From the IMG/VR virus record IMGVR_UViG_3300042923_000601, positions 182,690 through 246,689 of that record: a stretch of 64,000 nucleotides of DNA; one strand, written 5' to 3'. This document shows, one piece after another, positions 23,581 to 61,883 of this stretch (the stretch's first letter is position 1; the number at the start of each line of letters is the position of its first letter). Below the pieces are notes generated by a model. The model saw only the letters and a program-made list of their open reading frames with translations. It was not told the origin of the DNA and ran no database searches. The position numbers were made by a program, and so were the translations under genes.

Positions 23581-23763
23581 ATGAGTATTAAACTCGTGTT
23601 TAAAGAGGAGTACCTAAGAGGGCGCAAGCAACGGAAGACAGCACGGACTATCGTGAAAACGACAGACGTTGTGCTTGAAACTGTTGAACAAATTGTGCCG
23701 GGTAAAGCTGGTAAAAGTGCCAGACTGCTCCGTGAACTTCTGAGAATTATCTCAGGACAATAG
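23581..23763 (+). CDS. 60-aa basic protein starting MSIKLVFKEEYL
   Basis: AGGAGGT RBS; early motif upstream. Confidence 0.7.
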   Translation: MSIKLVFKEEYLRGRKQRKTARTIVKTTDVVLETVEQIVPGKAGKSARLLRELLRIISGQ

Positions 23764-23922
23764 AGACAAAACTTGCTCATCCCCTGCCCACCTAAAAGTC
23801 AGCCACTATGGCAAATAAACTAAATCAAGCTCGGGGGAGCGGTAAAATCTATGTCTAAACACGAAGTAATTGTGCGCCGTAGTTGTACAGCCCCTCATAA
23901 CCATCCAGAGGGGGATACAACA

Positions 23923-24021
23923 ATGAACGGTATCATAATTATTATTGACGCACTTTTTGGCAAGAAGTCTGACAAGAAGAAACCAAAGAATGATTCCTAT
24001 ACAGTCAAGTTCCATTGTTAA
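23923..24021 (+). CDS. small peptide MNGIIIIIDALFGKK... (may start at ATG 23851)
   Basis: GAGGGG RBS; followed by terminator. Confidence 0.4.
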   Translation: MNGIIIIIDALFGKKSDKKKPKNDSYTVKFHC

Positions 24022-24034
24022 TATATAGCGTTAC

Positions 24035-24073
24035 AAAAGAATACCTGTCCAGGGAGTCAGGTATTCTTTTTTT
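24035..24073. terminator. bidirectional terminator
   Basis: aaaagaatacctg..caggtattctttt + T-tract. Confidence 0.75.
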
Positions 24074-24111
24074 GCTTTTAGCACGAAAAACGTCTAGTAT
24101 TCTGCACGTCG

Positions 24112-24123
24112 AACAAGATAATA
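24112..24123 (+). promoter_or_regulatory. late-type promoter motif AACA-N6-TA
   Basis: aaca-agataa-ta at the start of the head gene cluster. Confidence 0.6.
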
Positions 24124-24151
24124 TACTTAAATACATGAAGGAGGGCACGAC

Positions 24152-25291
24152 ATGATCATCGAACAGCTTATCACGTTCGGTAAGATGATGCAGAAAGAAT
24201 GGTCACTTATCACGAGCAAGACTCATGTCAACTTTGGTCAAAGTCCGACGCGGAATAAATCCATATCGTCACTTGCCAATGACAGTACTTATTTTTACCC
24301 GGTTGTAGGCTCGGAATACCTTTCCGCCGATGAACTGGTTATGCTCACTCGGGCATTTGAACGGTCGTATGCCGTATTCACCCGTACAGCATTCTCTCTC
24401 ATCCCGGCAGTTGAGGTTCCAAGTTTCACGAATGCCACCGTTCGTAACTACCTCACCCAGTTCCATACAAACATGAACACGGTTCCTAACTGGGGCGGTA
24501 CGATTGACAAGAATAATGGATTCACACTCAATGAAACGTCTCTTAATGAGGCATCAACGGGTGGCCCTGACCCTATCGGCGGTCCACTGGGGCCGATTGA
24601 AACAAACGTTAAACGGGCAGAGCCATTTAAAAAGGCAACTACTCTTTTTTCGGATTTGGATTGGAAGAAAGCAAACGATATGTTACCTACCACTATGCAA
24701 GTGCCTGTTAAATTTGTGTCTAGGGACACAAAGGCAGAGGCGGTTGTCGATGTTATGGTAAATATCAAGGCAACAATGCACCGCTCGGCGTCAAGCCCGC
24801 TGGTACAGGACATTGCCAACAGCGTTAACGGCAAGAGAGGACTTCTGAACTTCGTTAAATGGTTCTCCGGTGAACAAAAATCATTGTCGGACTTGCTGTT
24901 TGGTGTTAGCCAGATGAAGTTCGATATTCAGAATAAGAAAGCCAGCCCTTGGGTTGAGGCGTTTAAACGCCGCGCTCGTCTGGCTCAGGGTGGATCGGCT
25001 ATGCTGATGAACAACCTGAAACCAATCGCAACCCTTTGTGTAACCATGAACGAAGTTAACGCTCTGAAAACGCAATACGACATTGATGTTTTTAAAGACG
25101 TTAAGAAAATCATGGACGCTTACTACCTGCTCGGATTCTGCATCGTTGACCAAGTGAACGAAGTCGTATACGTTCGTTACGACTCACAGGTTGACTTTCA
25201 AGAGTTCCCATACAAAACACTGGAACGCGAAGCAGCCAGCCAAGACCGTACCCTTAAGGATATGGTTAAAGCTATGGGCGCACTTCGCTAA
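24152..25291 (+). CDS. virion structural (head) protein
   Basis: AAGGAGG RBS; internal LNET/LNEA sites; biased codon usage. Confidence 0.6.
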   Translation: MIIEQLITFGKMMQKEWSLITSKTHVNFGQSPTRNKSISSLANDSTYFYPVVGSEYLSADELVMLTRAFERSYAVFTRTAFSLIPAVEVPSFTNATVRNYLTQFHTNMNTVPNWGGTIDKNNGFTLNETSLNEASTGGPDPIGGPLGPIETNVKRAEPFKKATTLFSDLDWKKANDMLPTTMQVPVKFVSRDTKAEAVVDVMVNIKATMHRSASSPLVQDIANSVNGKRGLLNFVKWFSGEQKSLSDLLFGVSQMKFDIQNKKASPWVEAFKRRARLAQGGSAMLMNNLKPIATLCVTMNEVNALKTQYDIDVFKDVKKIMDAYYLLGFCIVDQVNEVVYVRYDSQVDFQEFPYKTLEREAASQDRTLKDMVKAMGALR

Positions 25292-25308
25292 TAAAGGAGG
25301 GTTATCCA

Positions 25309-26253
25309 ATGCACGATCAGTTGCTACTCTTTGAGCATATTAAAGAGCATTACGATGCTCCTATGCGGTCACGCTTTATGAGCATGACTGAAGCAGAGCA
25401 GGTTACGGTGGGGCGGAATCTGGTAGACAGAATCTATGTCACCATCGCCGAGAAGTATAATGAAGTCGATTTCGAGAATATTCCGGCATCCAAAGGTGAC
25501 ATCACCAAGCTGCCTGAGTATGCTAACCTCAAAGCGTCTCTTACCCTTCTGGCCGAGATCGAGAAAAGTTCGAATCAATCGATCCCGGAGATTAAGGTCC
25601 TGACTGACGCACTTCAATATTTGGAGATGTTCTCTAGCGACTTCTATATGGGATTCGTTAAGAAGAATGCTTCGATTATCATGACCTATAACCTTCTTGC
25701 AATGTCGGTTATTTGCGGGACATCCTTGATGATCTCCGTTCTGGTTGATTACGTCAACCTGGGTAACACCGACAGCGTACAGGTAATCATCAATACCAAA
25801 TACCGTAAAGGTCAAAAGTACCTACTGATCGATTCTTTGAATCAGTTCTGTGTACAGGCCAGAAACGGTGCATTCAAACGCAACCTTACTGCAATGGCTA
25901 AACCGGCTCCAATCCAAGAAGCTGTGCTTACATCCATTGCATTCTACTCTGCAGCTGTATTTGCAGCCTTCACTATTATCCCTCTGATTAAAGAATTGAT
26001 CTATCTCTTCTACTTCAGCCGGATGAAAATCAGTGAGGCTGCAAAAATTCAGGCTGATCTTCTGAATGCTAACATTCAGTCGGTTCAGGCTTCGGGGAAA
26101 GCGACAGATAAGATGGTTCGCATCCAAAGCTGGTTTGCGGATAAGCTGTCTAAGATTTCCCATGTATTCGCTTTTAACTATGAAAAGAATGAGCGGAAGG
26201 CACAGGCTGAAGCAAAAGCCAAGCTTACCCAATCCGATATCGTTCTCTTCTAA
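25309..26253 (+). CDS. virion protein with hydrophobic (possible membrane) helices
   Basis: MTEA and IQEA sites; IPASKGDITK; hydrophobic segment after IQEA. Confidence 0.6.
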   Translation: MHDQLLLFEHIKEHYDAPMRSRFMSMTEAEQVTVGRNLVDRIYVTIAEKYNEVDFENIPASKGDITKLPEYANLKASLTLLAEIEKSSNQSIPEIKVLTDALQYLEMFSSDFYMGFVKKNASIIMTYNLLAMSVICGTSLMISVLVDYVNLGNTDSVQVIINTKYRKGQKYLLIDSLNQFCVQARNGAFKRNLTAMAKPAPIQEAVLTSIAFYSAAVFAAFTIIPLIKELIYLFYFSRMKISEAAKIQADLLNANIQSVQASGKATDKMVRIQSWFADKLSKISHVFAFNYEKNERKAQAEAKAKLTQSDIVLF

Positions 26254-26260
26254 AACTGTA

Positions 26261-26282
26261 TACGGTCCCTTCGGGGGCCGTA
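26261..26282 (+). terminator. hairpin
   Basis: tacggtccc-ttcg-ggggccgta. Confidence 0.55.
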
Positions 26283-26314
26283 TTCCTCAAAGTTTATAGA
26301 TGAGAGGTGAGATC

Positions 26315-26758
26315 ATGTTTAATACAATCCTCGAAAATGCAACAATGCCCAAGCCATTGGTATTCCTTGGTGGCACGTGCGGCGATTCCAAGTGGCGCGA
26401 GGTACTCATGCCACAATTGGAGATCGATTACTTCAATCCGGTTGTCGATGACTGGAAGCCTGAGGATCAGGAAAAGGAACTTGAGGTTCGTGCTAAAGCG
26501 GACTATCTCCTTTACGTGATCACACCTAAGGCATCCGGTATGTATTCGGCGGCTGAGGTTGCAGATGACAGTAACAAGAGACCTAAGAAAACGATATTCT
26601 GCTATCTGGCAAGTGACGGTGGGTCAATATTCACAGCTGAACAAGTCAAGTCGATGGATTCAATCGGTAGACTGGTTGAGGCTAACGGTGGAACATGGCT
26701 TAAGTCACTGGAAGAGGTCGTCAAGACCTTAAACATGACGCCGTATTTGAATTTGTGA
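26315..26758 (+). CDS. nucleoside 2-deoxyribosyltransferase-like domain protein
   Basis: VFLGGTCGDSKWRE..YFNPVVDDW..E..YSAAEV pattern; N-terminal MFNTILENA extension. Confidence 0.8.
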   Translation: MFNTILENATMPKPLVFLGGTCGDSKWREVLMPQLEIDYFNPVVDDWKPEDQEKELEVRAKADYLLYVITPKASGMYSAAEVADDSNKRPKKTIFCYLASDGGSIFTAEQVKSMDSIGRLVEANGGTWLKSLEEVVKTLNMTPYLNL

Positions 26759-26773
26759 AAGGAGGAGTAACGA

Positions 26774-27727
26774 ATGTTTCATGATATTATCAGAGAAACC
26801 AACCAACTTTTTCATCCAGAAGGTATAACCGAATCTGTAACCGAAAGCCGGTACAATTTGCTTAGCTATCTGTCTGAAATGGCAACACTGCCTTTACATA
26901 CCCACGGGGTACTGTCCGAGGCCGATGTACCCGATATTGTCGGAAAACAGAAAGGTATCATTCGCCGGTTGATTGAATTTTTTGCCCGGATGATTCACAA
27001 TATCAAAACCCGTATTACGGCTCGGTTCCAGTCGGCTGAGGAGCGTCTCAATACGCTTCAGAAGTATCTGAGAACCATCGATCATCGAGCCATTCAAATC
27101 AATACCCGTATGAAGATTAATTCTTTCGATCGGGTTCTGGATACGGTGTTTAAAATCGAAGATGAACTTAGAGCAAACCAGCTCAATAACCTCATGGAGA
27201 CATTCTTTAAAATGGGGAAGGTTGAGAAGGGGATGGAAGTTATCAAAGCCGCTGCAACCAAGGGTAAATCCATTGCAGAACGGTTTTCTGGCTACGTTCC
27301 TTCTATGGTGAAATACAACGGCAAGAATGTGGAGCAAATCCGCGATGAGTTACTCGGTGAGATTGGCCCAACGACCAATATTCAAACCGAGAAATTCTTC
27401 TCCAACCTTGAACGTGGCAAGAAGTTTAAGAACGAACTGGATAAACTAGTGGCTGAATACAGTAAGGTATTGAACGGTCTGTCGGCAGCCGCTGAGGCAT
27501 CTGATAAGATGCAATCAATCGGTCCTAACGGTCAGCACATGTTCAATAGCATTGTAAACACCATGACATCGTTCTTTAACCGCAACGTTCATTTGGTTAC
27601 AAGTCTGGTACTTGAAATTATTGATACAACTCAAACCGCAGCATTTCGAATGGTAGCAACTGCTAACACCCTCGGTCTGGCAGGTGCAGCTGAAGTGTTG
27701 CGCTCAGTAAGACCCGATAAGAAATAG
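26774..27727 (+). CDS. internal head paralog-family protein
   Basis: MFHDIIRET leader; ITES/VTES/LSEA; IIRRLIEFF helix. Confidence 0.65.
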   Translation: MFHDIIRETNQLFHPEGITESVTESRYNLLSYLSEMATLPLHTHGVLSEADVPDIVGKQKGIIRRLIEFFARMIHNIKTRITARFQSAEERLNTLQKYLRTIDHRAIQINTRMKINSFDRVLDTVFKIEDELRANQLNNLMETFFKMGKVEKGMEVIKAAATKGKSIAERFSGYVPSMVKYNGKNVEQIRDELLGEIGPTTNIQTEKFFSNLERGKKFKNELDKLVAEYSKVLNGLSAAAEASDKMQSIGPNGQHMFNSIVNTMTSFFNRNVHLVTSLVLEIIDTTQTAAFRMVATANTLGLAGAAEVLRSVRPDKK

Positions 27728-27741
27728 AAGAGGTGACGATC

Positions 27742-28584
27742 ATGTTCGACTTCAATTCAGGTGAAGTTTACAAAAAGGTTCCAGGGCTTACACTTGAAGA
27801 TGCTATTACAGCTATTCAGGAGAGTAGCTTGTCTCTATCAACTACACCGGCTGGTGACCAGAACACCGGTCAGTCCCTGCTTGTAAGAGTGAAAGAAATC
27901 TTTGAAAAGATTAAAACCAAGGTCATGGCTTTTGTCAACGGATTATTGAAAAAGCTCCGGCTTAATTCTGCGGGCAAGCTTGACTTCATTAAGAAAAATG
28001 AAGCCCGCATTAAGAACTACTCCAAGCCTCATATGATATCCATGCCTAAGAATTTGGCCAATCCACTGAAGCCATACAGTGCAAAGCTAATATGGGCACG
28101 CATTGTGGATGCAGGCCAGCGCATGGGTGTTATTGGCACACTGGCTAGGGATGAAGAAACGATCAGAAAGATGCATGCTAAGTATACCGATGAGATCATC
28201 ATGAATGTACTGGCTGGTATGGTTACTGATCCCGATGCAAAACTCCTTACAGATGAAATCATCTATGCTGAATACGTCGGTAAGGATGCGAGCATTGATA
28301 TCAGTAAACTGAACAAGGAAGCCTTGATCCAACAGGCTGTACAACTCCATGCTGACTTTGAGGAATTTGCTAAGCAGCGCGGCGAATACTCCAAGTTTTT
28401 GGATACCATAACTCGCGATAACAAATTGTTTGAAGCCGAAAACCGGGTGGCGACCAATATGTTGGTAACGCTGGTTTCCCGGTTTGTAACAGCGACTCTT
28501 CGTTTCACATCGGTTATGAGTAGTGTGTTGATGAAGCGATTCAATGTAATCTATTCTATCCTTCACCGCATGGCTACTCACTAA
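27742..28584 (+). CDS. internal head paralog-family protein
   Basis: MFDF leader; IQES; VKEIFEKIKTKVMAF helix. Confidence 0.65.
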   Translation: MFDFNSGEVYKKVPGLTLEDAITAIQESSLSLSTTPAGDQNTGQSLLVRVKEIFEKIKTKVMAFVNGLLKKLRLNSAGKLDFIKKNEARIKNYSKPHMISMPKNLANPLKPYSAKLIWARIVDAGQRMGVIGTLARDEETIRKMHAKYTDEIIMNVLAGMVTDPDAKLLTDEIIYAEYVGKDASIDISKLNKEALIQQAVQLHADFEEFAKQRGEYSKFLDTITRDNKLFEAENRVATNMLVTLVSRFVTATLRFTSVMSSVLMKRFNVIYSILHRMATH

Positions 28585-28604
28585 TCTAAAAAGGAGGAAC
28601 TACT

Positions 28605-29396
28605 ATGTTTAATTTGACATACCAGCCCAATGGTAAAATCTCAGCCATCGACAATAATCTGCGACCTATCAGTATCCAAGAAGCAGTCTTTGAAATCGGG
28701 CAGCTGCGTGTACAACTGATCACAGAAGCCGACGGTGAGGATAAGAAGGCGAAGTTCAAGCGGATCGTCAAAGACCTGATTGCGAAGATCAAAGCCTTCT
28801 TTAAAGGGCTTGCCCTTAAGATTACAAAATCAGCGACTGAACGGGAGAAGTTCGTTCTTGAGAACAAGGGAACGATCCTTAAATACAGCCCTGGTGATGG
28901 CACAGCCAGTATCCCATCGCACCTGTTGAAACCTTCGGTTAAACTAACCACGGGTTTGATCATGTCCGCAACCAGCAAAGTCATTACCCACCCGGACGGG
29001 TTTAACAGTGAGCATGCGATGGAGAACGTACTCAAAATTATCGCCCCATCATACAAAGAAGGGATATCCATATCTGAATTCTTCAGTTTTCTTCATGGGG
29101 AGCAGACGGATGTCCCTCTAAAAAATATTTCTCCGGCGCAATTAATTGATTCATTCCTATCGGACATGAAGTTCCTTAAGGAGCTTGACAAGTGGGAAAC
29201 CAATTTTATTTCATACGCTGAAAGACCAGGCAGTTATGAGATGGATCATGAAAATCCAGAGCTTGTGATTTCGCATATTATTCAATTCGGTATCTCCATC
29301 ACTGATCTTGTATACCGGACTGTCATACATGCGACTAATGTGAAGTTCTCCCTTCTCAAAGCAATGGAATCTGCAGCTAACGATCGCGACAACTAA
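28605..29396 (+). CDS. internal head paralog-family protein
   Basis: IQEA/ITEA; IVKDLIAKIKAFF helix. Confidence 0.65.
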   Translation: MFNLTYQPNGKISAIDNNLRPISIQEAVFEIGQLRVQLITEADGEDKKAKFKRIVKDLIAKIKAFFKGLALKITKSATEREKFVLENKGTILKYSPGDGTASIPSHLLKPSVKLTTGLIMSATSKVITHPDGFNSEHAMENVLKIIAPSYKEGISISEFFSFLHGEQTDVPLKNISPAQLIDSFLSDMKFLKELDKWETNFISYAERPGSYEMDHENPELVISHIIQFGISITDLVYRTVIHATNVKFSLLKAMESAANDRDN

Positions 29397-29416
29397 TATT
29401 AAAGGAGGAAACCAAA

Positions 29417-33460: not shown

Positions 33461-33491
33461 AAAAAAAAAACGACCAGCTAGATGCTGGTCG
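33461..33491 (-). terminator. terminator of the HNH gene
   Basis: cgaccagc..gctggtcg hairpin with A10 on the plus strand (U-tract on the minus strand). Confidence 0.7.
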
Positions 33492-34371
33492 TCGTAGTAA
33501 ACTGGTATTGGGTGTAGGTATGTCCCCAATATTTTAATTCTGCATCTTGACGCGCTCGCACTGCATCTTCTAAAGAATCGTATATGCCGACCTTAGTCAG
33601 CTTAGTGTTCTTATCAACGAAGATACCAACGAGATACGTGCCACCTGGGCGTTCGTATACCCCGGCATACCCAGTTTTACTACGGGTAGCTCTCCTATTA
33701 CGCCCCTGTTCTTGACGTGTTGCCCATACACAATTATCTTTACTATAGTTACCGTTAACATCAAGCCTATCAATCGTGTGATAGCTAGATGGGCGATCCC
33801 CCATGTCACGAATAAAGTCGTCAAATGATTCCCACTCAACACGAATGCCGCGCCCGCCGTAGTACTCATAATCCAAACACTTAGGGTTATTACAACGGTA
33901 ATTAATGGCGTTCCATGTTTTCAGTTCAGGTGTTCTGATGTATTTCCCGTATTGAGATTTCTTCGAGCATCCGCATGTTTTAACAGTACCGGATACTAAT
34001 GAACCACTCGGTACGACAACGATTTCACCGCAGTCACATATGCACTGCCACAAGGCGGCTCCTTTTTTATTTTGACCAACCATCTCAATGACTGTCAGGC
34101 TGTTAAATTTGCGACCGGTGTAATCCTTGATGCGGATGCATCCGCATGATTTAGTATGTCCTATTCGGAACATTACACCCGATACTTCAATCATATTGCC
34201 GCATATGCATCTTGCATACCACATGTGACGGTCTTTCCTTTTACGCGAATAGCCTATAATCGTAAGCTTTTCAAGTTTATGTCCTTTGATATTTTGCATT
34301 TGGCGATATTTTGCAACAGCTCTACTCGTCCTTTCCTCAAGGTAGGACTCTTTAAATGCAAGATTCAACAT
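33478..34371 (-). mobile_element. free-standing HNH-AP2-type homing endonuclease gene
   Basis: Two W.C.C.CG..SCGC-type repeats; RC.NP..YYGGRGI.V.W; TIDRLDVNGNYSKDNCVWAT..Q.RN; C-terminal AP2-like domain; antisense insertion in the head cluster. Confidence 0.85.
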
Positions 34372-43389: not shown

Positions 43390-44016
43390 TCATCCCTTCG
43401 TTTTATTAATTAGAATATCCCGATGTGTCATCGGTTTGATAATAACGACAGGTACATTTCTTGAGTTAGCATAATTAATACAGTGTGACGTTCCACCTTG
43501 GCGGCCATTCCATACAGCAATCATTAAATCAGCCATATTCACCATGTGCTTATTCCGGTCTAGAAGTTTCTTCTTATGAAACTCGCCAAATTCTACACCT
43601 GGTACTTGATATGCAGGTATACCGTCTACATAGATGCAGTTATCTGCTAGGGCCAATTGTTCACGATACCGATCACAATCTTTTGGACCCCATCTGCTAT
43701 CTTGATTCTCAAAAGGGACAGATACGATAATTTTGATCGTATACTTAGCACCCAGTGCTTCGCGCAAATCCCATACGGCTTGAAATGCCATTTGGTCAAT
43801 GCCTATTGCGCCGCCCATGACAAAGTGGAATTCTGTAACGCCATTTAGAGCCTGCTCTTGCATAACCTTTAGAATGGCGTATTTAAGTTGCAGCAAAATG
43901 GCAGCGTATAATGGGCTACCCCATACGACATGCCCCATGTGTTGAGGCCGGTGACCTGTAAACCCAATGACGAACTTCTTCCTATTGGGGTTAAGAATTA
44001 ATCGAATCTGACTCAT
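43390..44016 (-). CDS. SLOG-family (YspA/DUF1273) nucleotide-binding protein
   Basis: FTGHRP..GGAIGIDQ..VPFENQDSRW..RNKHMV..AVWNG..GGTSHCINYA. Confidence 0.85.
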   Translation of the reverse strand: MSQIRLILNPNRKKFVIGFTGHRPQHMGHVVWGSPLYAAILLQLKYAILKVMQEQALNGVTEFHFVMGGAIGIDQMAFQAVWDLREALGAKYTIKIIVSVPFENQDSRWGPKDCDRYREQLALADNCIYVDGIPAYQVPGVEFGEFHKKKLLDRNKHMVNMADLMIAVWNGRQGGTSHCINYANSRNVPVVIIKPMTHRDILINKTKG

Positions 44017-54677: not shown

Positions 54678-54682
54678 TCCTC

Positions 54683-55717: not shown

Positions 55718-55734
55718 TATGTAATCACCTCTTG

Positions 55735-56295
55735 TTAGTTGACGATAGGTCTAAATACCGGAGATAGATAAATACCATGAATTGCGAAATCCTTAATCAT
55801 TAATGGTGCATCGTATACGTATGGTCCCTCAGCTACATTTCCTGTCGCCTTGAAGAAAGCTTTCAGTTCTTGAAACTCCGGTACCGGAGCATGAATCTCC
55901 GCAATGATGCCATAGACACCAGCCGGTGACATCCCGAACGCCAGCGTTCGGCCAATAAGGTTTTCGTATCGTATCATCAGTAATTCAGTAAGGTCATTAT
56001 GAATCGATGTCCCAAATTCGATATCCCCCATTCCCATTTTCACCCGCTCTTGATTCTCGTATTTATCGATCTCGGATACAAAGAGATCACGAGGATAGAT
56101 ACGGTTGGTGAGAGTTGGCATATCGGGCTGTACGATCAATTCATACCACTTTACCTGATCAGGCGATACACATTTTGATAGCCTAGCTAACCTCCGTTCC
56201 CGGCGTTCAGTGGTATCGTCTGTCATAACTGCATCAATCACCTCTTTCGAAAATCCCCTTACTTCCAGTACTTCGCTAAGTGCCAAATCCATCAA
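55735..56295 (-). CDS. degenerate prohead-protease (T4 gp21-like) paralog
   Basis: TNRIYPRDLF..EIDKY resembles gp21 NGRIYP; expected His and Ser motifs are replaced. Confidence 0.45.
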   Translation of the reverse strand: MMDLALSEVLEVRGFSKEVIDAVMTDDTTERRERRLARLSKCVSPDQVKWYELIVQPDMPTLTNRIYPRDLFVSEIDKYENQERVKMGMGDIEFGTSIHNDLTELLMIRYENLIGRTLAFGMSPAGVYGIIAEIHAPVPEFQELKAFFKATGNVAEGPYVYDAPLMIKDFAIHGIYLSPVFRPIVN

Positions 56296-56316
56296 TAAAG
56301 CCTCCTTATATTATAA

Positions 56317-56336
56317 CTTCACCTCTATAATATATA
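56317..56336 (-). promoter_or_regulatory. early-type promoter motif
   Basis: minus strand tatatattatagaggtgaag. Confidence 0.7.
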
Positions 56337-56391
56337 CTTATAACGGCATGTTTCACCGGCACGCAAAAAAAATAAGCCCCGAAGGGCTAGG

Positions 56392-56679
56392 TTACCGTAC
56401 CGTATTGTATCTTGGCACAGTATTATTGATCATTGAATCGTACATCCGGTATAGCCGTTGATACGCAGTCAGTGACTCATGGTGAGATGGGTCAATCCTA
56501 CGTTTCATACTCACGTACCATTCCTTTGCTGCATACTTGTCATGGTAGAAATATTCCTGTATACCCAGCTTAGTATGTTGAGCCTCGCCGGATAGTTGGA
56601 AGATATAGAACAGGATTTCATCCGTCTTTGATTTAAAGTACGAGACGTCCTCATGTGCTACGGGATATCTATCAACCAT
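56392..56679 (-). CDS. J-domain-like phage protein lacking HPD
   Basis: YF....ILFYI..L.G....LGI...Y.DK..AKEWY..MKRRIDPS..AYQRL..MY. Confidence 0.45.
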   Translation of the reverse strand: MVDRYPVAHEDVSYFKSKTDEILFYIFQLSGEAQHTKLGIQEYFYHDKYAAKEWYVSMKRRIDPSHHESLTAYQRLYRMYDSMINNTVPRYNTVR

Positions 56680-56711
56680 ATCATCTTATCCTTTCTACCT
56701 TATTAATTGGA

Positions 56712-56990
56712 TTACATCCCGATGATCTTTTCTCGCTGTACTACCCAGCACCCACATCTGCAGTCGAGTTTATGTGCCATTGGGTCCTGTTTAAAGGGAT
56801 CGCCTGCGGGTAGTATTGCTGTAGGTGAAACATATGGCCGGTTAGCGTATTGCAATCGACCCTCCCGATACTCAATCTCGTTGAGTAACCTCCGGAGTTT
56901 CATCTTTAACACGAACCTTCTCAACCAACCAGAGTGATCCATCATACTTCTGTGTCGTAATGCTTCGTATTTGAGTTTAGCGAGTTGCAT
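56712..56990 (-). CDS. hypothetical protein with C-terminal CxCxC
   Basis: AAAGGA RBS before ATG 56990; operonic position. Confidence 0.55.
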   Translation of the reverse strand: MQLAKLKYEALRHRSMMDHSGWLRRFVLKMKLRRLLNEIEYREGRLQYANRPYVSPTAILPAGDPFKQDPMAHKLDCRCGCWVVQREKIIGM

Positions 56991-56991
56991 T

Positions 56992-57624
56992 TCATTTATA
57001 TCCTTTCGTGGGTAAGTTATCAAGCATACGTTTTTCTTTTTGATTCAGTTCACTCTGAACACTCAGGGCCTGCCTACGCTGAGCCACCATAAGCTCGATT
57101 TCGTTTTGCTCATGGGCGCGTTCAAATTCCATGACTTTTTCTTGGTATTCAGTCTCCACATCCATCAGTAGTTGGAACCATCTGATGTCGTTGACCAACC
57201 AGAATGGATGCTGTAAGTACCCCAGTCCATTATTAGGTCTAAGTTCTGGAGGTATAAGAGTCATCCGCCGCGTTACAAGCACGATCATGTCGCGGTTAAC
57301 TTTATCGAAGTATATCACAGAAATATGATTATTCGGACACCCATGGTCAAAAGTAACAATCGTTATATAGTCAAGACTGTACGTTGGTCGGTCGAATGAC
57401 ATAATGTGCTCAGCAAAATGTCCGTTATCTCTATGCATATACGAGATAGATGGGTCTTTTATATTTTGTATACCACGGATTCGATCATATACATAGTCGT
57501 CTGTAATAAGCGTTTTGACAGCATGGCGAAGGTTTGCTTCTGCGGCGAGCCTTAAACGTTCTTCCTTATCAGCCCTGCGCCGATTAAACCCAAGTTTTTC
57601 CTTCAGTGACTCCAGCATCAACAA
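56992..57624 (-). CDS. hypothetical protein
   Basis: GGAGGT RBS; coiled-coil C-terminus. Confidence 0.65.
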   Translation of the reverse strand: MLMLESLKEKLGFNRRRADKEERLRLAAEANLRHAVKTLITDDYVYDRIRGIQNIKDPSISYMHRDNGHFAEHIMSFDRPTYSLDYITIVTFDHGCPNNHISVIYFDKVNRDMIVLVTRRMTLIPPELRPNNGLGYLQHPFWLVNDIRWFQLLMDVETEYQEKVMEFERAHEQNEIELMVAQRRQALSVQSELNQKEKRMLDNLPTKGYK

Positions 57625-58073
57625 CTACCTCCTGTGTATACGTGGTCGATATAATTCATCCAGCTTTTATACCAGTCACGAACAGGACCTTCTTTAAACT
57701 CCCAGAACTTAAGCCATGGTACCATGTTCCCACCAATTACATGATATACATTATAATCTGATGTGGTCAATTCTACTATCGACCCCTCTTTAGACAACCA
57801 GACTTCGATAACTACGCCACCATGATGGAAACGGTTAGCTGCTCGGCGCAGAATACGTCTATCCCTACGACTCATAGACTTGCGTTTAGTGACACGAGTC
57901 CTATCATCCGGCACATTCGATACGGCTGTCAGAGGATTATCATGGGTCTCCACTATCTTCTGGAGGCTTGCTGATGGTTCCCCCATTGCCTCAGCAGTAT
58001 CTGTTATAAATTTTGGTAGTTTGGTAAAGATCAGTCTATAACCTGTGATTGCTGGATTGAATTGTTCAGTCAT
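57618..58073 (-). CDS. hypothetical protein
   Basis: GAGGG RBS before ATG 58073. Confidence 0.6.
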   Translation of the reverse strand: MTEQFNPAITGYRLIFTKLPKFITDTAEAMGEPSASLQKIVETHDNPLTAVSNVPDDRTRVTKRKSMSRRDRRILRRAANRFHHGGVVIEVWLSKEGSIVELTTSDYNVYHVIGGNMVPWLKFWEFKEGPVRDWYKSWMNYIDHVYTGGSC

Positions 58074-58266
58074 TGTCAGCCCTCGTCCTCTCATAATCAA
58101 TCATCTTAAACCTCCAAGTGTTCTTCGTTTTTCTTTTGCCTTTCGTATCTTTAGTCTCAGCAGTTTCAACCTTAATAACTGTCTAGACTTACTTTTCTTT
58201 TTCATGAAATCAACCCCATTGTATTGACGTAAAGAGGAGAGCTGGTTCCCCAGCTCTCCAGTTAGC

Positions 58267-59055
58267 TTACTTTTTCTTTTTCTTGCCGTGCTTCTTATCT
58301 TTCTTGGCTTTCTTTTCAGCCTTAGCATCCTTACGGTCCTGATTAGCTTCCTCTTTCGGTGTCATGATACCCGACAGAGAAAGGTTCAGCATGTACTTCT
58401 CAACGAAGTCATGGTACTTCATTTCTTCTACCCGACCACTGCGATACATGATTTTGCAGACCTTTGTGCAGCCTGTCAAGTCATAGAACCGCGCGGACAG
58501 GTACACCGAGTTAGCACGATCAAACGCTTCTTCGATTACAAACATCTTCAGCAGCTGGTTGATGGAATAGATGGAGTCAATAATGGCATTAGGTGTGAAC
58601 CATTCGCCTGCTTTGCTGAAGCGTTCGTCTTCGTCAAGTCCGAAGAACTCGTATTCACGTTCGAAACTGATGAACTTGATTTTGGTCAACTTCTTAAATG
58701 TCTTGAGCGGTACCATCTGGAAGAGGTTCTTTCCGAGATCGACCATAACGACAGCTTTAGGATACCGGCTATTGAGTTTCTTCAGCTTCTTAGCCGGGAT
58801 TGACCCAACACAGCGGAAGATTTCAGTTGCCGTTTCATCATAGATAACGAAGGTCTTACCTTTAGGATGCTGGTAATCCTCCGGAAGATTACGAGGTTTG
58901 TTATCCTCGTATGCCTTAATAAGCTCCTCTTCAAGAGAGAGCTTACGTTTCTTTTCAATCTTAGTAACCGGCTTAGCACTTGGGTTGTATGACGTACCCG
59001 AAGCCCGCTCGATCATTTTACGTCCAGTTTTGTTAGCTACAAGTTTGATTGTCAT
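58267..59055 (-). CDS. basic hypothetical protein, paralog of 61044..61883
   Basis: VMVDLG..KTFKKL..IKF; SINQL; Lys-rich tail. Confidence 0.7.
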   Translation of the reverse strand: MTIKLVANKTGRKMIERASGTSYNPSAKPVTKIEKKRKLSLEEELIKAYEDNKPRNLPEDYQHPKGKTFVIYDETATEIFRCVGSIPAKKLKKLNSRYPKAVVMVDLGKNLFQMVPLKTFKKLTKIKFISFEREYEFFGLDEDERFSKAGEWFTPNAIIDSIYSINQLLKMFVIEEAFDRANSVYLSARFYDLTGCTKVCKIMYRSGRVEEMKYHDFVEKYMLNLSLSGIMTPKEEANQDRKDAKAEKKAKKDKKHGKKKKK

Positions 59056-59133
59056 GTTTATTTTACCTCCTTGGTATTCTTACCTATTAGTTCGGGGTTA
59101 TCATAAATATTACCGAGATGCTTACGCTCACCA

Positions 59134-59697
59134 TCACTCACCCTTAATTTTACCACCAATAAGTTCAGGATTGTCATGCATATTCCCAATCTTGGTTGGG
59201 TTACCATGACGTCTGGATGCAATATCATCCCAATCTTGAGCAGATTCCTCGATTCCGATTAGTGGTGCAAGCCAGTTTCCCTTCACAATAGGTTGAAAGA
59301 GAAACTGGTTATCTTCACAGACTACAAGGAAGCAGTAGTCGTCTTCTTTGGATCGGTCAGTTTCAATGATATCATCCTCAAACAACATCGCGCCACTGTC
59401 CCGATCCAGTCGATTAATAAACTGACCAACGGTTGTTGGATCAACAGCCCACGCTGCCATGTGGTATTCACCGTCAGTCTCACTTCCTGAATGGATGATA
59501 TACTTGTGATCAGGTTGGTCTTCTTTATTGCGGATGCTGGTCTCCAGTACTCTCTGGATATCGCCATACACCCATTGACCATAGAATTCTCCCTCTGTAA
59601 TACACTTCCCACGCCAGAGATTCGCGCGGGGTTCAAGGTCACCGAAAGGCCCCTTCTTGATTGGAAGGGGTACAAGTCTTAAATACGGTGTACTCAT
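59134..59697 (-). CDS. yopX: YopX-family protein
   Basis: WRGK..WVYGD..VDPTTVGQF..FEDDI..IGNMHDNPEL. Confidence 0.85.
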   Translation of the reverse strand: MSTPYLRLVPLPIKKGPFGDLEPRANLWRGKCITEGEFYGQWVYGDIQRVLETSIRNKEDQPDHKYIIHSGSETDGEYHMAAWAVDPTTVGQFINRLDRDSGAMLFEDDIIETDRSKEDDYCFLVVCEDNQFLFQPIVKGNWLAPLIGIEESAQDWDDIASRRHGNPTKIGNMHDNPELIGGKIKGE

Positions 59698-60236
59698 TAT
59701 TCAACCTCCCCTTCCACCACTGGTAGCAGGTCTGGATTGTCATGACTGTTACCAACGACAATGATACGACCATTATCAGGACTACTAATGAATCCCCATT
59801 CATGGAGATGGTCTTCTTCCTCCGGTACTTCGCCGTCACGTGAGAATGGCTCGAAGTAGAATCCTTCGTCTTCCCACACGGCAAGGTATTGATAACCGGC
59901 AGCAGCACTTAATGCAGTTTCAACGATGTCATCTTCGAAGATCAACTTCTTATTATCATCGTTGCAAGTCGTATACTGGCCGACCGTTTCAGGGTCTACT
60001 GGATACAACTGTACTGAACATTCGGAGCCTTGGAGAACCTGAACTGCGATATACACAGCATCAGAGGACTCTACTCCATCCTCAGTTTCCTTGACGCTGG
60101 ACAAATCCCCATATACCCAGCGAGGATTATCACCAGTTGTTTTACCTCTAAACAAAGGCATCTTACTGACAACTTTTGGTTGGTTATCAAGCCCCTTCTT
60201 TGGAAGGGGCACTAATCTCAAGTATGGAATTGTCAT
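59697..60236 (-). CDS. yopX: YopX-family protein
   Basis: FRGK..WVYGD..VDPETVGQYT..IFEDDI..VGNSHDNPDL. Confidence 0.85.
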   Translation of the reverse strand: MTIPYLRLVPLPKKGLDNQPKVVSKMPLFRGKTTGDNPRWVYGDLSSVKETEDGVESSDAVYIAVQVLQGSECSVQLYPVDPETVGQYTTCNDDNKKLIFEDDIVETALSAAAGYQYLAVWEDEGFYFEPFSRDGEVPEEEDHLHEWGFISSPDNGRIIVVGNSHDNPDLLPVVEGEVE

Positions 60237-60248
60237 TTGTCATTCTCC

Positions 60249-60890
60249 TTATCTTCGGTTAGCCCGAGTTGACTGGTTAGCTAATGCCATTGTGGTTAGC
60301 GCCCTAAGATAAGGGACAGCCTGCGCAACAGCATCGCGGGTTTCAGCAAGTTTAAGCTCAACTACATTGTCTGGCTTTGGCGGTGCAGGCGGGGTACTTT
60401 CCACGATCACCGTCTTTGACTTTGAAGCTTTCTGTTTCTTAGACAGCTTCTTATGCTTGGCTGTCAACTGCTCAACGGTCTTTCTAAGGTCAGTTGCTGT
60501 GGACTCTAGGGTCTGCAGCTTCTGGTTCTGGTCTTTGAAAAGACGATCATACGACCGGCGCAAGCGCTCCATCTCCGACATCTTCATTACAATATAACCA
60601 GCACTGTTTCGAACGTATGGCGCTGGCTTACTGTGGTGATTGTCGAGTCGCCGCATAATCTCTTCGAATACAGCATTGTGATCAACTGCAGGTTCATCGG
60701 TATCATACAGGTACACCTCTCGGACGGTCTTGATATGATCGCCCTGCTGGTCAATGTACTCTACCCGTTTTTCCTTAACTTTTGAAGTGGTAACCGGAGC
60801 CTCAAATCGAGGTTCCGGGCTGTGCGATGGATTACACCGAGCGATCATGGATTGCCCGATAGGTGTCGGGGTTAGTTTTAACATCCGCAA
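60249..60890 (-). CDS. coiled-coil hypothetical protein
   Basis: AAAGGAG RBS; heptad region. Confidence 0.65.
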   Translation of the reverse strand: MRMLKLTPTPIGQSMIARCNPSHSPEPRFEAPVTTSKVKEKRVEYIDQQGDHIKTVREVYLYDTDEPAVDHNAVFEEIMRRLDNHHSKPAPYVRNSAGYIVMKMSEMERLRRSYDRLFKDQNQKLQTLESTATDLRKTVEQLTAKHKKLSKKQKASKSKTVIVESTPPAPPKPDNVVELKLAETRDAVAQAVPYLRALTTMALANQSTRANRR

Positions 60891-61043
60891 TTGCTCCTTT
60901 TCGTTTCATTATTTTCATTTCGATAGGTGCTGCTGTATTACGAGGCCCCGTTAGTGTAATCGGGAAAGGTACAATTCGTGGATGACCATATGGGTCAAAC
61001 GCGTTTGATACCGGTAAATTAAGGTATAGCATGCCACACTTCC

Positions 61044-61883
61044 TTACCCGTAGATTTGATACCGCTGAAGGAATTTATCCAGCGACATCTTCTTAACACT
61101 GTCGTCGTCGAATAGAATACTGACAGATTCTCTGATCTTTTGCTCGGAATACCAACCGTCTCCGGTTTGATACGCCATTGCCATTTCGATGATCCCCTCA
61201 CGCCGGTTAAGGATGTAAAAGAGCTGGTTCATCGATGTGATCTTGTAAGTCTTATTGATAACCTCAACGAAGTAATCATCACCGTCTTGCTTCTGTGACA
61301 CTACAATTCGAAGGGTCATAAACCGAATGTGACGGAGTTTTTGATAGGTCTTATAGTCGAGCATCCGGTACGACTTCATACCAGCATCAACCATGACCGC
61401 ATCATAACTGTGGAAGCCGAGTTGCTTCTCCTCAAATGGAGACATGCCTTCCACAAATTGATACATACCGGCTCTAGACCATGGCTCTCCATTAGGGCCA
61501 ATAGACGGCCTTTGCATAATGAAGTTAGGACTAGTGTCGTGAACGAAATAATAGGAATTGTCGGTATTAGCGTTACGATTCATCTTGTCGACCAGTTTAC
61601 CATGCAGCTTCCGTTCTTTATCATTGAAGCTTGCTCTGATACGCATACGGTCGCCTTCTGACGGGTCAATCCAATCATCAAAGCCGCCATCGTACCGATC
61701 TTTATTCGCGGGTCTTTTCAGGTTGAACAGATAGCCGGGTGCTGTCCCAGCTGCAATCATGTCATTAACCATCATATCGTCGGTTATATTATCATCCGCC
61801 GATTCTTGGTTTGCATATTTCCGGGAAATGGTTACTCCCTTTCTCTGGAGATAATCTTCCCTGAATACCAGTTTAAGTGTCAT
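61044..61883 (-). CDS. hypothetical protein, paralog of 58267..59055
   Basis: VMVDAG..KTYQKL..IRF; SMNQL; N-terminal MTLKLVFREDYL. Confidence 0.7.
   Translation of the reverse strand: MTLKLVFREDYLQRKGVTISRKYANQESADDNITDDMMVNDMIAAGTAPGYLFNLKRPANKDRYDGGFDDWIDPSEGDRMRIRASFNDKERKLHGKLVDKMNRNANTDNSYYFVHDTSPNFIMQRPSIGPNGEPWSRAGMYQFVEGMSPFEEKQLGFHSYDAVMVDAGMKSYRMLDYKTYQKLRHIRFMTLRIVVSQKQDGDDYFVEVINKTYKITSMNQLFYILNRREGIIEMAMAYQTGDGWYSEQKIRESVSILFDDDSVKKMSLDKFLQRYQIYG

What the first reader, a model, noticed from the sequence alone, without database searches (positions are those of the whole stretch)
23581..61883. Shared N-terminal tag (I/L)(K/N)L(V/A)F(K/R)E.YL on unrelated non-structural proteins
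Seen: three apparently unrelated proteins start MSIKLVFKEEYL (23581), MLNLAFKESYL (HNH endonuclease, 34371) and MTLKLVFREDYL (61883). Their codons differ, so the conservation is at protein level. Looser versions occur in MTIKLVAN (59055), MSTPYLRLVPLP and MTIPYLRLVPLP (both YopX, as extensions before the family core), MLKLTPTP (60884) and MSQIRLILNP (SLOG, before FTGHRP). Established: the ClpX N-motif-1 degron resembles T-x-K-(I/L/V) near the N-terminus. Inference: a phage-wide docking, localisation or degradation tag added to early proteins, acquired even by a mobile endonuclease.
Basis: partly seen in the sequence, partly recalled or inferred. Interest (0 to 1): 0.7.

Follow-up and report, generated by a model that had tools for sequence, protein, structure and literature searches.

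The report
Shared end-tag on phage DNA/RNA enzymes
An uncultivated soil jumbo phage has attached the same roughly ten-residue peptide (consensus KLVFKPEYL) to the very start or very end of many unrelated DNA- and RNA-handling proteins; it looks like a docking or address label, but its partner is unknown.

Summary
The window is the last 64 kb of a complete 246,689-bp soil jumbo phage distantly related to AR9/PBS1.

- **Where the tag sits.** Outside the window it also follows the Met of the GyrA-like topoisomerase II subunit and of two paralogous ORFs. It also lies at the C-termini of both halves of the non-virion RNA polymerase beta subunit, and more loosely on an SF2 helicase.
- **Statistics.** Nine hits scored at least 15 bits against 0.15 expected.
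- **Selection.** Codons are scrambled, so selection acts on the protein.
- **Conservation.** The tag on RNAP beta-C, topo II-A and a small 60-aa protein is conserved across a metagenomic clade. AR9-level homologues lack it, and so do the 119 nearest HNH homologues.
- **Origin and structure.** It matches one strand of a beta-hairpin repeat in the RNAP beta-N tail. AlphaFold2 models these tails as flexible.
- **A second tag.** A different N-terminal tag, LxLIxEG, marks virion-type proteins, including the virion RNAP beta.

Best reading: an exposed terminal docking peptide shared by replication and transcription enzymes. The partner is unidentified. A ClpX degron alone cannot explain the C-terminal copies.

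The parts
23581..23763 (+). Small 60-aa protein 'A'. It consists of the tag (residues 3-12, IKLVFKEEYL, nt 23587-23616), a basic stretch and a C-terminal amphipathic helix (GKSARLLRELLRII).
   Evidence: Translation. SD and start context. Syntenic orthologues in all three complete relatives keep an N-terminal tag variant and the C-terminal helix: VKLVFKKEFL, LKIVFDAEKF and IKITLNIENF.
23532..23550 (+). Promoter-like element TATATTAT-N-GTG, about 49 nt upstream of the start of gene A.
   Evidence: The same element lies 45-90 nt upstream of about 30 genes genome-wide, always pointing at the gene, including RNAP beta-C. Similar sequence lies upstream of the A orthologues in G001 and G002.
33478..34371 (-). 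HNH homing-type endonuclease (297 aa) with the tag at residues 2-11 (LNLAFKESYL, nt 34339-34368), on a roughly 25-residue N-terminal extension.
   Evidence: Translation. phrog_374 HNH endonuclease at 1.2e-78, starting at residue 80. None of the 119 nearest homologues has the tag; they begin M..DLTGxKFGxLTV.
61044..61883 (-). 279-aa protein of unknown function with the tag at residues 3-12 (LKLVFREDYL, nt 61848-61877).
   Evidence: Translation. No Pfam or PHROG family. Orthologues in G001 and G003 start MIKIVPKGRS and MLRITKVTLIRPED. It is a distant paralogue of the 58267-59055 protein.
58267..59055 (-). 262-aa protein with a loose tag (MTIKLVANKTG); a paralogue of the 61044-61883 protein.
   Evidence: Orthologues keep an N-terminal strand: MYRLIPTKKG, MSTVQLVPNIFG and MSKYIQIIPNHFG.
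59134..60236 (-). Two tandem YopX-family genes (59134-59697 and 59697-60236) with the N-terminal extensions MSTPYLRLVPLP and MTIPYLRLVPLP (loose tag, variant RLVPLP).
   Evidence: Weak Pfam YopX hit starting at residue 54. N-termini. The variant resembles RIVPKP on topo II-A and RNAP beta-N of the closest relative.
60249..60884 (-). About 211-aa protein with a loose tag (MLKLTPTP).
   Evidence: Weak orthologue in G001 without an obvious tag. This one could be a generic N-terminal strand.
43390..44016 (-). YpsA/SLOG-family protein with a loose tag (MSQIRLILNP) before the family core.
   Evidence: Pfam YpsA at 3.5e-12 from residue 19. The G001 orthologue starts MYKLRRKTRTV.
14561..15532 (+). Carrier of the second, different N-terminal tag (MHPIQYKLKLIKEGVS). 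It is included for contrast and is not part of the KLVFKPEYL set.
   Evidence: The LxLIxEG class has 7-14 N-terminal copies per genome in all four genomes against fewer than 0.25 expected.

Best explanation
The peptide is a terminus-anchored short linear motif: a basic-flanked beta-strand (K/R-L-V-F-K/R) followed by P/E-x-Y-L. It has been appended as a flexible extension to the first or last residues of many otherwise unrelated enzymes that act on phage DNA or RNA.

**Carriers:**
- both halves of the non-virion RNAP beta subunit;
- topoisomerase II-A;
- an SF2 helicase;
- an HNH homing endonuclease and a NUMOD4 homing-endonuclease-like ORF;
- the YopX and SLOG proteins;
- a conserved 60-aa 'tag-plus-helix' protein.

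In sequence the tag is one strand, plus the start of the next, of the beta-hairpin repeat ([YH]VRNxxG[YF]IxL...KPx[FY]). That repeat forms the C-terminal extension of the RNAP beta-N subunit and also ends the DnaB-like helicase.

**Shown:** the motif is real and selected at the protein level. It is terminal. It is conserved in orthologues across a clade and absent from more distant homologues. It lies in segments modelled as disordered. It is distinct from a second tag carried by virion-type proteins.

**Inferred:** the exposed strand docks by beta-strand addition onto one shared partner, either a phage-encoded hub or the hairpin arrays themselves. That would bring replication, transcription, topology and homing enzymes together on phage DNA. 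Because the motif works as an address label, newly arriving mobile genes are selected to acquire it.
For: - **Real and terminal.** 9 PSSM hits against 0.15 expected, 7 of them at termini. Tag pairs stand out in an unbiased comparison of termini.
- **Protein-level selection.** Codons are scrambled.
- **Carriers are nucleic-acid enzymes.**
  - RNAP beta-C matches PF00562 and PDB 7S00 chain C at 3.5e-95.
  - RNAP beta-N matches 7S00 chain c at 8.7e-43.
  - Topo II-A matches PF00521.
  - The remaining carriers are an SF2 helicase, a DnaB-like helicase, HNH, and the NUMOD4, YopX and SLOG proteins.
- **The tag is an appended extension.**
  - The beta-N tail lies beyond residue ~495, whereas the AR9 subunit is 496 aa.
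  - HNH homologues lack the N-terminal extension.
  - Cellular GyrA and homologues at 33% identity lack it.
- **Conserved in orthologues at 45-66% identity.**
  - RNAP beta-C tails read ...MSKKx[IV][KR][LIV][VI]FK[PED]xY.
  - Topo II-A N-termini read MWRIVPKPEYL, MYRLRFKPEF and MTYIVKPKKGFF.
  - The small protein A keeps its tag in all four genomes.
- **Variants tend to change together within a genome.**
  - PEY/PEF versus G-W/G-F in both beta-C and topo II-A.
  - F to P in both topo II-A and beta-N of the closest relative.
  - F-K to F-D in both beta-C and protein A of G002.
- **Relation to the hairpin repeat.** There is an internal copy, RLTMKPRFI, in the beta-N tail. Hairpin repeats are widespread in beta-N homologues.
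- **Flexibility.** pLDDT is 37-55 for beta-N residues 545-617 and about 50 for topo II-A residues 1-30, while the cores score above 85.
- **Contrast with the second tag.** The unsplit 1427-aa RNAP beta, which has no PDB match and is presumed to be the virion enzyme, carries LRAIQAG of the other tag class instead.
Against: - No partner was identified.
- Sequence searches found no sliding clamp (PF02768, PF09116), no chimallin, and no ClpX zinc-binding domain or ClpP in this genome or its three complete relatives.
- The DNA polymerase, ligase and UvsX-like recombinase carry no clear tag, so the set is not the whole replisome.
- The strict ten-residue form on six or more proteins is specific to this genome. 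In the relatives only RNAP beta-C, topo II-A and protein A keep recognisable forms.
- The co-variation rests on about three lineage-level switches, not on many independent events.
- Low pLDDT may partly reflect shallow alignments for the tails.
- The GyrA N-terminal arm could simply contact the GyrB-like subunit.
Confidence: 0.45

Rival explanations
1. The tag is a recognition or tethering signal for a host AAA+ protease or chaperone, so it sets protein stability or remodelling rather than phage-specific docking. Candidates are ClpX via its N-domain, as for the lambda O and Dps N-motif-1 or the SspB/RssB C-terminal ClpX-binding region, or DnaK, which prefers a hydrophobic core flanked by basic residues.
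For: - The N-terminal copies start 1-3 residues after the Met.
- They read polar-hydrophobic-basic-hydrophobic, like the Dps start MSTAKLVK and the lambda O start MTNTAKIL. Those two sequences are from my own knowledge, not from a tool.
- The strand hydrophobic-R-hydrophobic-V resembles the SspB tail LRVVK (own knowledge).
- A conserved C-terminal ClpX-binding region that docks on the ClpX zinc-binding domain is described in PMC7226468.
- RNAP beta-C tails end in basic residues (AKKK, ASRK, TRNK).
- The motif occurs at both kinds of terminus, as ClpX tethering motifs do.
Against: - The tag is conserved on essential enzymes (RNAP, topoisomerase) across a deep clade, which is an odd place for a degron.
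- The conserved P/E-x-Y-L half is not part of any ClpX or DnaK motif.
- The relation to the RNAP hairpin repeat is left unexplained.
- The host is unknown (soil metagenome).
- The phage encodes no ClpX zinc-binding domain or ClpP of its own.
Confidence: 0.2
2. The tag and the related hairpin repeat are small nucleic-acid-binding arms. These basic, aromatic beta-hairpins would raise each enzyme's local affinity for phage DNA or RNA, with no protein partner involved.
For: - Every identified carrier acts on DNA or RNA.
- The tag is followed by basic residues (RGRKQRK, SKSK, AKKK, TKKEN).
- Hairpin repeats rich in K, R and aromatic residues sit at the RNAP beta-N split site in many homologues.
- Homing-endonuclease-type proteins carry it.
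Against: - A single nine-residue strand with a hydrophobic L-V-F face is a poor DNA binder on its own.
- The strict conservation of F and Y-L, and the strict placement at the termini, are not explained.
- No known nucleic-acid-binding family matches the tails.
Confidence: 0.15
3. It is a second class of capsid-targeting propeptide. The tag would direct proteins into the prohead and be cut off by the S77 prohead protease after the Glu (VFKE|E, VFRE|D), as with the 10-residue T4 capsid-targeting sequence.
For: - The N-terminal copies are 8-10 residues long and end in hydrophobic-basic-Glu, like the I-[RKQ]-E of the LxLIxEG class.
- The clade encodes Peptidase_S77.
- In T4 the first 10 residues of IPIII suffice for packaging, and giant-phage prohead proteases cut after Glu (PMC9026906).
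Against: - The C-terminal copies do not fit an N-terminal propeptide.
- Three strict copies have K-P-E, with Pro next to the Glu.
- The carriers are homologues of the non-virion RNAP and replication enzymes, whereas the presumed virion RNAP beta carries the other tag.
- The tag is followed by basic sequence, not acidic sequence as in the other class.
Confidence: 0.07
4. There is no common function. The similarity would be a mix of paralogy, generic N-terminal beta-strands and chance.
For: - 61883 and 59055 are paralogues, and so are the two YopX genes.
- Loose 'M-x-K-L-hydrophobic' starts are common. The Rad50/SbcC-like ATPase (MYRLIHFECENF) is conserved as part of its fold.
- The relatives show weaker enrichment.
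Against: - Nine strict hits against 0.15 expected.
- 8 of 10 residues are identical with 0 of 8 shared codons between an RNAP subunit C-terminus and a topoisomerase N-terminus.
- The tag is conserved in orthologues.
- The HNH extension is lineage-specific.
Confidence: 0.05

Closest known systems
Sliding-clamp-binding motifs: bacterial QL[SD]LF on Hda, Pol II/IV/V and MutS, and the T4 gp45-binding tails of gp43, gp55 and gp33 (own knowledge)
   Same: A short hydrophobic peptide at the extreme N- or C-terminus of many unrelated DNA and RNA enzymes, including transcription proteins in T4. It sits on flexible tails and docks by strand addition plus a hydrophobic plug.
   Different: The consensus is different. 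No clamp gene was detected in this genome. The DNA polymerase here has no clear copy.
T4 capsid-targeting sequence and giant-phage propeptides (PMC9026906)
   Same: A peptide of about 10 residues shared by unrelated phage proteins and acting as an address label. The same genome has a clear candidate of that type, LxLIxEG.
   Different: The KLVFKPEYL tag also occurs at C-termini. It sits on non-virion enzymes, is followed by basic sequence and lacks a clean L/I-x-E site in half of its copies.
ClpX recognition and tethering motifs: N-motif-1 of lambda O and Dps, and the ClpX-binding region of SspB and RssB (PMC7226468; sequences from own knowledge)
   Same: A hydrophobic-basic-hydrophobic strand close to a free terminus. 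Such motifs occur at either terminus and bind by beta-augmentation.
   Different: The extra conserved P/E-x-Y-L. The tag sits on conserved essential enzymes. The link to the RNAP hairpin repeat has no counterpart. No binding evidence was obtained.
AR9/PBS1-type non-virion multisubunit RNAP (PDB 7S00, 7S01, 7UM0, 7UM1)
   Same: The beta-N and beta-C subunits here are clear homologues, with the same split of beta.
   Different: The AR9 subunits (496 and 665 aa) lack the roughly 110-residue helix-plus-hairpin tail of beta-N and the tagged tail of beta-C.
Protein import into the chimallivirus phage nucleus (PicA/Imp1 pathway)
   Same: The carrier set (non-virion RNAP, helicases, topoisomerase, homing endonuclease) resembles the proteins that are imported into the phage nucleus. 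The clade encodes a tubulin.
   Different: No chimallin homologue was found. PBS1-type phages are reported to lack chimallin (bioRxiv 10.1101/2023.02.24.529968). Import in Chimalliviridae is reported not to use terminal signals (PMC13282480).

Membership tests
Short linear motif (SLiM) on a disordered terminal tail | Short (under 12 residues) and lying in a segment without stable fold | tested here: met
   The AF2 models give pLDDT 37-55 for RNAP beta-N residues 545-617 and about 50 for topo II-A residues 1-30, while the cores score above 85.
Short linear motif (SLiM) on a disordered terminal tail | Conserved among orthologues while absent from more distant homologues, and present in unrelated proteins | tested here: met
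   Orthologue tails. Absent from AR9-level RNAP subunits, from cellular GyrA and from 119 HNH homologues. No similarity between carriers outside the tag.
Short linear motif (SLiM) on a disordered terminal tail | Binds a defined partner domain | not testable with these tools
   No partner was identified. The single complex job gave no verdict.
ClpX N-motif-1 degron | Located within about the first 10 residues of the protein | tested here: not met
   True for the N-terminal copies. However, the same peptide sits 4-11 residues from the C-terminus of both RNAP beta halves and of a helicase.
ClpX N-motif-1 degron | ClpX(P)-dependent recognition or degradation | not testable with these tools
   The host is unknown (soil metagenome) and there is no experimental handle.
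T4-type capsid-targeting sequence or propeptide | An N-terminal peptide ending at a prohead-protease site (hydrophobic-x-Glu) on proteins found in the virion | tested here: not met
   C-terminal copies exist. The carriers are non-virion RNAP homologues and replication enzymes. The other tag class fits this description instead.
Sliding-clamp-binding motif | Consensus QL[SD]LF or the T4-type LDFLF | tested here: not met
   The consensus here is [KR]LVF[KR][PE]xYL.
Sliding-clamp-binding motif | A clamp is encoded or available | tested here: inconclusive
   No PF02768 or PF09116 match in the genome. A divergent clamp or the host's clamp cannot be excluded.
Chimallivirus nuclear cargo | The phage encodes the shell protein chimallin | tested here: not met
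   phiKZ gp054 finds nothing in G000-G003 even at E up to 10. This was a single-sequence search, so a very divergent shell is not excluded.
AR9/phiKZ-type non-virion RNAP beta (the two main C-terminal carriers) | Homology to solved non-virion RNAP beta-N and beta-C chains | tested here: met
   7S00 chain c at 8.7e-43 and chain C at 3.5e-95; phiKZ 7OGP chain C at 1.4e-15.

The most novel reading that the evidence does not exclude
The genome uses two address labels. LxLIxEG would send proteins, including the virion RNAP, into the capsid. KLVFKPEYL would be a linear localisation or import signal that sends the non-virion RNAP, topoisomerase, helicases and even homing endonucleases to a phage-built replication compartment or factory. 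This would be in a tubulin-encoding but chimallin-less jumbo-phage clade, and would be the first terminal-peptide sorting signal for a phage replication compartment.
Probability: 0.1. Interest if true: 0.9.

Novelty: new variant of a known kind. Interest (0 to 1): 0.62.

Why it matters
Shared terminal peptides are how phages and cells wire many enzymes to one hub or destination. Known examples are clamp-binding motifs, the T4 capsid-targeting sequence and ClpX tethers. Here a previously undescribed peptide marks the non-virion RNA polymerase, the topoisomerase, helicases and mobile endonucleases of an uncultivated jumbo-phage clade. A second, distinct peptide marks virion-type proteins.

If the partner can be found, it would show how AR9-like jumbo phages without a chimallin shell organise replication and transcription. 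It would also give a portable tag for directing proteins to that machinery. Finally, it would explain why incoming homing endonucleases adopt the host phage's label.

Tried and rejected
- **Close relatives by DNA or single protein.** A megablast of window 58000-64000 against phage records found no match. The search for related loci with the single RNAP beta-C protein found no relative; an alignment query then worked. The genome search by handle does not reach ENA, JGI or Logan loci.
- **Candidate hubs sought by sequence, none found.** These were the beta-clamp C domain PF02768, T4 gp45 PF09116, chimallin using phiKZ gp054, the ClpX zinc-binding domain PF06689, which gave only sub-threshold hits in 40-aa frames of two relatives, and ClpP PF00574.
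- **Families for the tails.** Pfam found no family for the RNAP beta-N tail, the helicase tail, the DnaB-like tail or seven homologous hairpin tails.
- **Functions of unknown carriers.** The ESM Atlas gave no usable hit for the three unknown tag carriers tried.
- **Complex prediction.** Two copies of E. coli ClpX residues 1-60 were folded with topo II-A residues 1-30. The result was no verdict, so it is evidence neither for nor against binding.
- **Ideas considered and dropped.**
  - Recent DNA copying or gene conversion: the codons are scrambled.
  - An RNA or translation-initiation element: excluded for the same reason and because of the C-terminal copies.
  - A ribbon-helix-helix strand: the sequence resembles the Arc strand FNLRWPREVL, but the C-terminal copies have no room for the helices.
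  - A 19-aa and a 23-aa 'mini-ORF': these proved to be the C-termini of the two RNAP beta halves.
- **PSSM hits judged internal or structural.** These are the hit at residue 78 of the window 4953-5750 protein and the hit inside the RecD-like helicase (IKIDFRPDYI, conserved in G000, G001 and G003). Neither was treated as a tag.

Full report
**Context**

The window is the last 64 kb (G000:C1:182690-246689) of a single-contig virus record of 246,689 bp rated 100% complete. It has no near relative among deposited phages.

By protein similarity its nearest named relatives are the AR9/PBS1, Staphylococcus S6 and Yersinia phiR1-37 jumbo phages, at about 35% identity on an RNA polymerase beta piece. 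These phages carry two multisubunit RNA polymerases and are reported to lack the nuclear-shell protein chimallin. The DNA comes from soil metagenomes.

Closer relatives exist only in metagenomes. A clade at 45-66% identity was found with the RNAP beta-C and topoisomerase proteins. I fetched three of its complete IMG/VR genomes in full: G001 (215,803 bp), G002 (206,953 bp) and G003 (246,901 bp). I called genes on them crudely for comparison.

**Checking the observation**

- MSIKLVFKEEYL, at the ATG at 23581. This is an in-frame internal start with AGGAGG upstream.
- MLNLAFKESYL, on the HNH endonuclease starting at 34371 on the minus strand.
- MTLKLVFREDYL, starting at 61883 on the minus strand.

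Scanning all six frames of the whole genome found further copies outside the window:
- MSLRLVFKPEYI starts the GyrA-like topoisomerase II subunit (genome 91612-94071).
- MMLKLIFSPNYL and MFRLIINPKYK start two paralogous ORFs (genome 24583-25960).
- ...DIRLVFKPEYLAKKK* ends a 703-aa protein.
- ...RPKLVFRPEYLEEKAVRRGETQ* ends a 617-aa protein.
- More loosely, ...GRIVLKWKESYLHGRN* ends an SF2 helicase.

The C-terminal copies were the unexpected part of this scan.

The statistics are as follows:
- A PSSM from six strict copies gives 9 hits of at least 15 bits against 0.15 in shuffled proteomes. Seven of the nine are at a terminus.
- In an unbiased all-against-all comparison of termini, tag pairs score 34-45, above the internal-segment maximum of 33.
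- The loose N-terminal form occurs 11 times against 2.0 expected from internal Met positions.

Codons are scrambled. The RNAP C-terminus and the topoisomerase N-terminus share 8 of 10 residues and no identical codon. Selection therefore acts on the peptide, not on DNA or RNA.

**Who carries it**

- The 703-aa and 617-aa proteins are the C- and N-terminal halves of a split RNAP beta subunit. Their best structural relatives are chains C and c of PDB 7S00, the AR9 RNAP (3.5e-95 and 8.7e-43). phiKZ gp71 of 7OGP also matches. This makes them the non-virion enzyme.
- The other identified carriers are topo II-A (PF00521), an SF2 helicase, the HNH endonuclease (phrog_374), a NUMOD4-type ORF that splits another RNAP subunit gene, two YopX proteins and a YpsA/SLOG protein.
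- The carriers of unknown function are the 61883 protein, its distant paralogue at 59055, and the 60-aa protein at 23581.
- The 60-aa protein is a real gene. Syntenic orthologues in all three relatives keep an N-terminal tag variant (VKLVFKKEFL, LKIVFDAEKF, IKITLNIENF) and a C-terminal helix GKSAKLLRELLRIFS.
- The DNA polymerase, the ligase, the UvsX-like recombinase and the recognised structural proteins have no clear copy.

**The tag is an appended, conserved, flexible extension**

- *RNAP beta-N.* The AR9 beta-N subunit is 496 aa and aligns to residues 97-494 of the protein here. The remaining ~110 residues are extra.
- *RNAP beta-C.* The alignment to AR9 stops at residue 663 of 703.
- *HNH.* None of the 119 nearest homologues has the tag. 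They begin M..DLTGxKFGxLTV, which corresponds to residue ~28 of the window protein.
- *Topo II-A.* Cellular GyrA and the 33%-identity homologues lack the extension.
- *Conservation on beta-C.* Within the clade the tail reads ...MSKKx[IV][KR][LIV][VI]FK[PED]xY in 13 of 17 homologues.
- *Conservation on topo II-A.* All 12 N-termini keep a strand followed by an aromatic residue.
- *AlphaFold2.* Both proteins have confident cores (mean pLDDT 85 and 84). The tails are modelled as not fixed: beta-N residues 545-617 score 37-55 and topo II-A residues 1-30 score about 50.

**Relation to a hairpin repeat**

The beta-N tail reads ...GYIQLVRPAHVRNDDGYIRLTMKPRFIPYVRNEQGYIKLRLINDMRPKLVFRPEYL.... The segment RLTMKPRFI is an internal copy of the tag. 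The tag is therefore the second strand of a [YH]VRNxxG[YF]IxL hairpin plus the start of the next one.

The same hairpin ends the DnaB-like helicase in all four genomes and in the closest relative. Repeats of the type [DN]xxG[YF]IxLxx[KR] fill the C-terminal extensions of many more distant beta-N homologues. No Pfam family matches these tails.

**Variants within genomes**

Variants tend to change together inside a genome:
- Beta-C and topo II-A both have K-P-E-Y/F in G000, G001 and the closest relative. Both have G-W or G-F-F/W in the G002/G003 lineage.
- In the closest relative, topo II-A (WRIVPKPEYL) and beta-N (PRIVPKPKS) both carry P where G000 has F. The DnaB-like tail there ends YIQLIPIRRP.
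- In G002, beta-C (KIFFDGW) and protein A (KIVFDAEKF) both replace F-K by F-D.

These amount to about three lineage-level switches. They suggest a shared constraint but do not prove one. The strict ten-residue form on six or more proteins is specific to G000.

**A second tag in the same genomes**

The comparison of termini also revealed M-x(3-8)-[KR]L[KRQ]-hydrophobic-I-x-E-G. It occurs 7, 8, 7 and 14 times in the four genomes against fewer than 0.25 expected.

One carrier is the unsplit 1427-aa RNAP beta. It has a PHROG match but no PDB match, so it is presumably the virion enzyme. This tag is followed by acidic sequence and contains I-x-E|G. The clade encodes a Peptidase_S77 prohead protease.

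[quoted passage not shown] The virion-type polymerase and the non-virion polymerase therefore carry different labels. This is the strongest circumstantial argument that KLVFKPEYL is also an address or docking label.

**Mechanism**

My best-supported reading, at confidence about 0.45, is an exposed terminal docking peptide. It would bind by beta-strand addition to one shared partner and bring nucleic-acid enzymes together on phage DNA. The partner could be a phage protein or the hairpin arrays on RNAP beta-N and the DnaB-like helicase themselves. Mobile endonucleases would be selected to acquire the label.

What is shown is the motif, its terminal placement, its protein-level selection, its conservation, its flexibility and its carrier set. 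The binding and the partner are inferred.

I could not identify the partner. Sequence searches found no clamp, chimallin, ClpX zinc-binding domain or ClpP.

The rivals are:
- a host ClpX or DnaK recognition or tethering motif (0.2);
- small nucleic-acid-binding arms (0.15);
- a second capsid-targeting propeptide (0.07);
- no common function (0.05).

It does not explain the conserved P/E-x-Y-L half, the hairpin relation, or why essential enzymes keep the tag across a deep clade. The one complex prediction (E. coli ClpX N-domain plus the topo II-A N-terminus) gave no verdict and is not evidence either way.

**Comparison with known systems, and novelty**

In logic this resembles clamp-binding motifs, the T4 capsid-targeting sequence and ClpX tethers. 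It is not a member of any of them. The consensus differs, and a defining feature fails in each case (see the membership tests).

I found no description of this motif, or of the beta-N hairpin tail, in the papers I searched. That is absence of evidence, not proof that it is undescribed. I rate it a new variant of a known kind, a shared terminal docking or address peptide, in an uncultivated jumbo-phage clade.

The most novel reading not excluded is a true sorting signal for a replication compartment in a tubulin-encoding, chimallin-less clade. I put its probability at about 0.1.

Noticed in passing
window 14561-15532 (+); also genome 47619-48155, 67190-67912, 90148-91569, 106623-107279, 112539-113183 and 168847-173130, and 7-14 genes in each of G001-G003: A second, distinct N-terminal tag, M-x(3-8)-[KR]L[KRQ]-hydrophobic-I-x-E-G, followed by acidic sequence. 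It is strongly enriched in all four genomes and is present on the unsplit 1427-aa RNAP beta. It contains a T4 gp21-like I-x-E|G site and the clade encodes Peptidase_S77, so it is probably a capsid-targeting propeptide.
   Followed up: partly
window 23532-23550 (+) and about 30 other sites genome-wide (for example genome 81301-, 85798-, 113770+, 225254-, 246193-): A promoter-like element, TATATATTATA-N3-4-GTG(A/T)A, lies 45-90 nt upstream of gene starts and always points at the gene. There are 39 TATATTAT hits against about 17 expected from composition. It precedes the small tagged protein A, RNAP beta-C and the tubulin gene. Similar sequence lies upstream of the A orthologues in G001 and G002.
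   Followed up: partly
genome 44015-47421 (outside the window); G002 97124-99845; G003 173220-175337: One RNAP subunit gene (phrog_3015) is split in G000 by a NUMOD4-type ORF that itself starts MLRLIPKDREEW. The gene is unsplit in G003 and split at a different point in G002. In G002 the new downstream piece starts MKIR fused to the native FKPDL, which recreates a tag-like N-terminus.
   Followed up: partly
G001 183705-183874 (-), the orthologue of the window 23581-23763 gene: The G001 orthologue of the small tagged protein has no ATG, GTG or TTG at the expected start. AAGGAGG is followed 9 nt later by ATA GTT AAA CTC GTA (…VKLVF). This suggests a non-canonical ATA start or a sequencing or assembly difference.
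   Followed up: no
genome 70724-72577 (-), residues ~500-617; homologues P0348-P0369: The non-virion RNAP beta-N subunit has a C-terminal extension that AR9 gp105 (PDB 7S00 chain c, 496 aa) lacks. It consists of a confidently predicted 45-residue helix followed by beta-hairpin repeats. Similar basic, aromatic hairpin repeats end many metagenomic homologues at 30-40% identity. No Pfam family matches.
   Followed up: partly
genome 81307-82617 (-), 84530-85732 (-), 1481-3235 (-): The UvsX-like recombinase ends in an acidic-aromatic tail (…KKLGWVDFD), conserved as GWLDF or GWTDF in the relatives, and the tubulin homologue ends …GDTFLEEF. These are other possible terminal docking peptides. A GroEL-like chaperonin (phrog_5725) is also encoded.
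   Followed up: no
genome 22835-25960 (-): Three tandem paralogues share the C-terminus (R/H)FYPSDEFK. Two of them carry the N-terminal tag and the third (MENVNEFDM) does not. None has a homologue in G001-G003, so this is a lineage-specific expansion.
   Followed up: no
window 61884-61935 (upstream of the 61883 start): A perfect inverted repeat, GGAGTAGGAGA...TCTCCTACTCC, followed by TATTTTATT lies just upstream of the tagged gene. It looks like an intrinsic terminator for the upstream gene 61947-63452.
   Followed up: no
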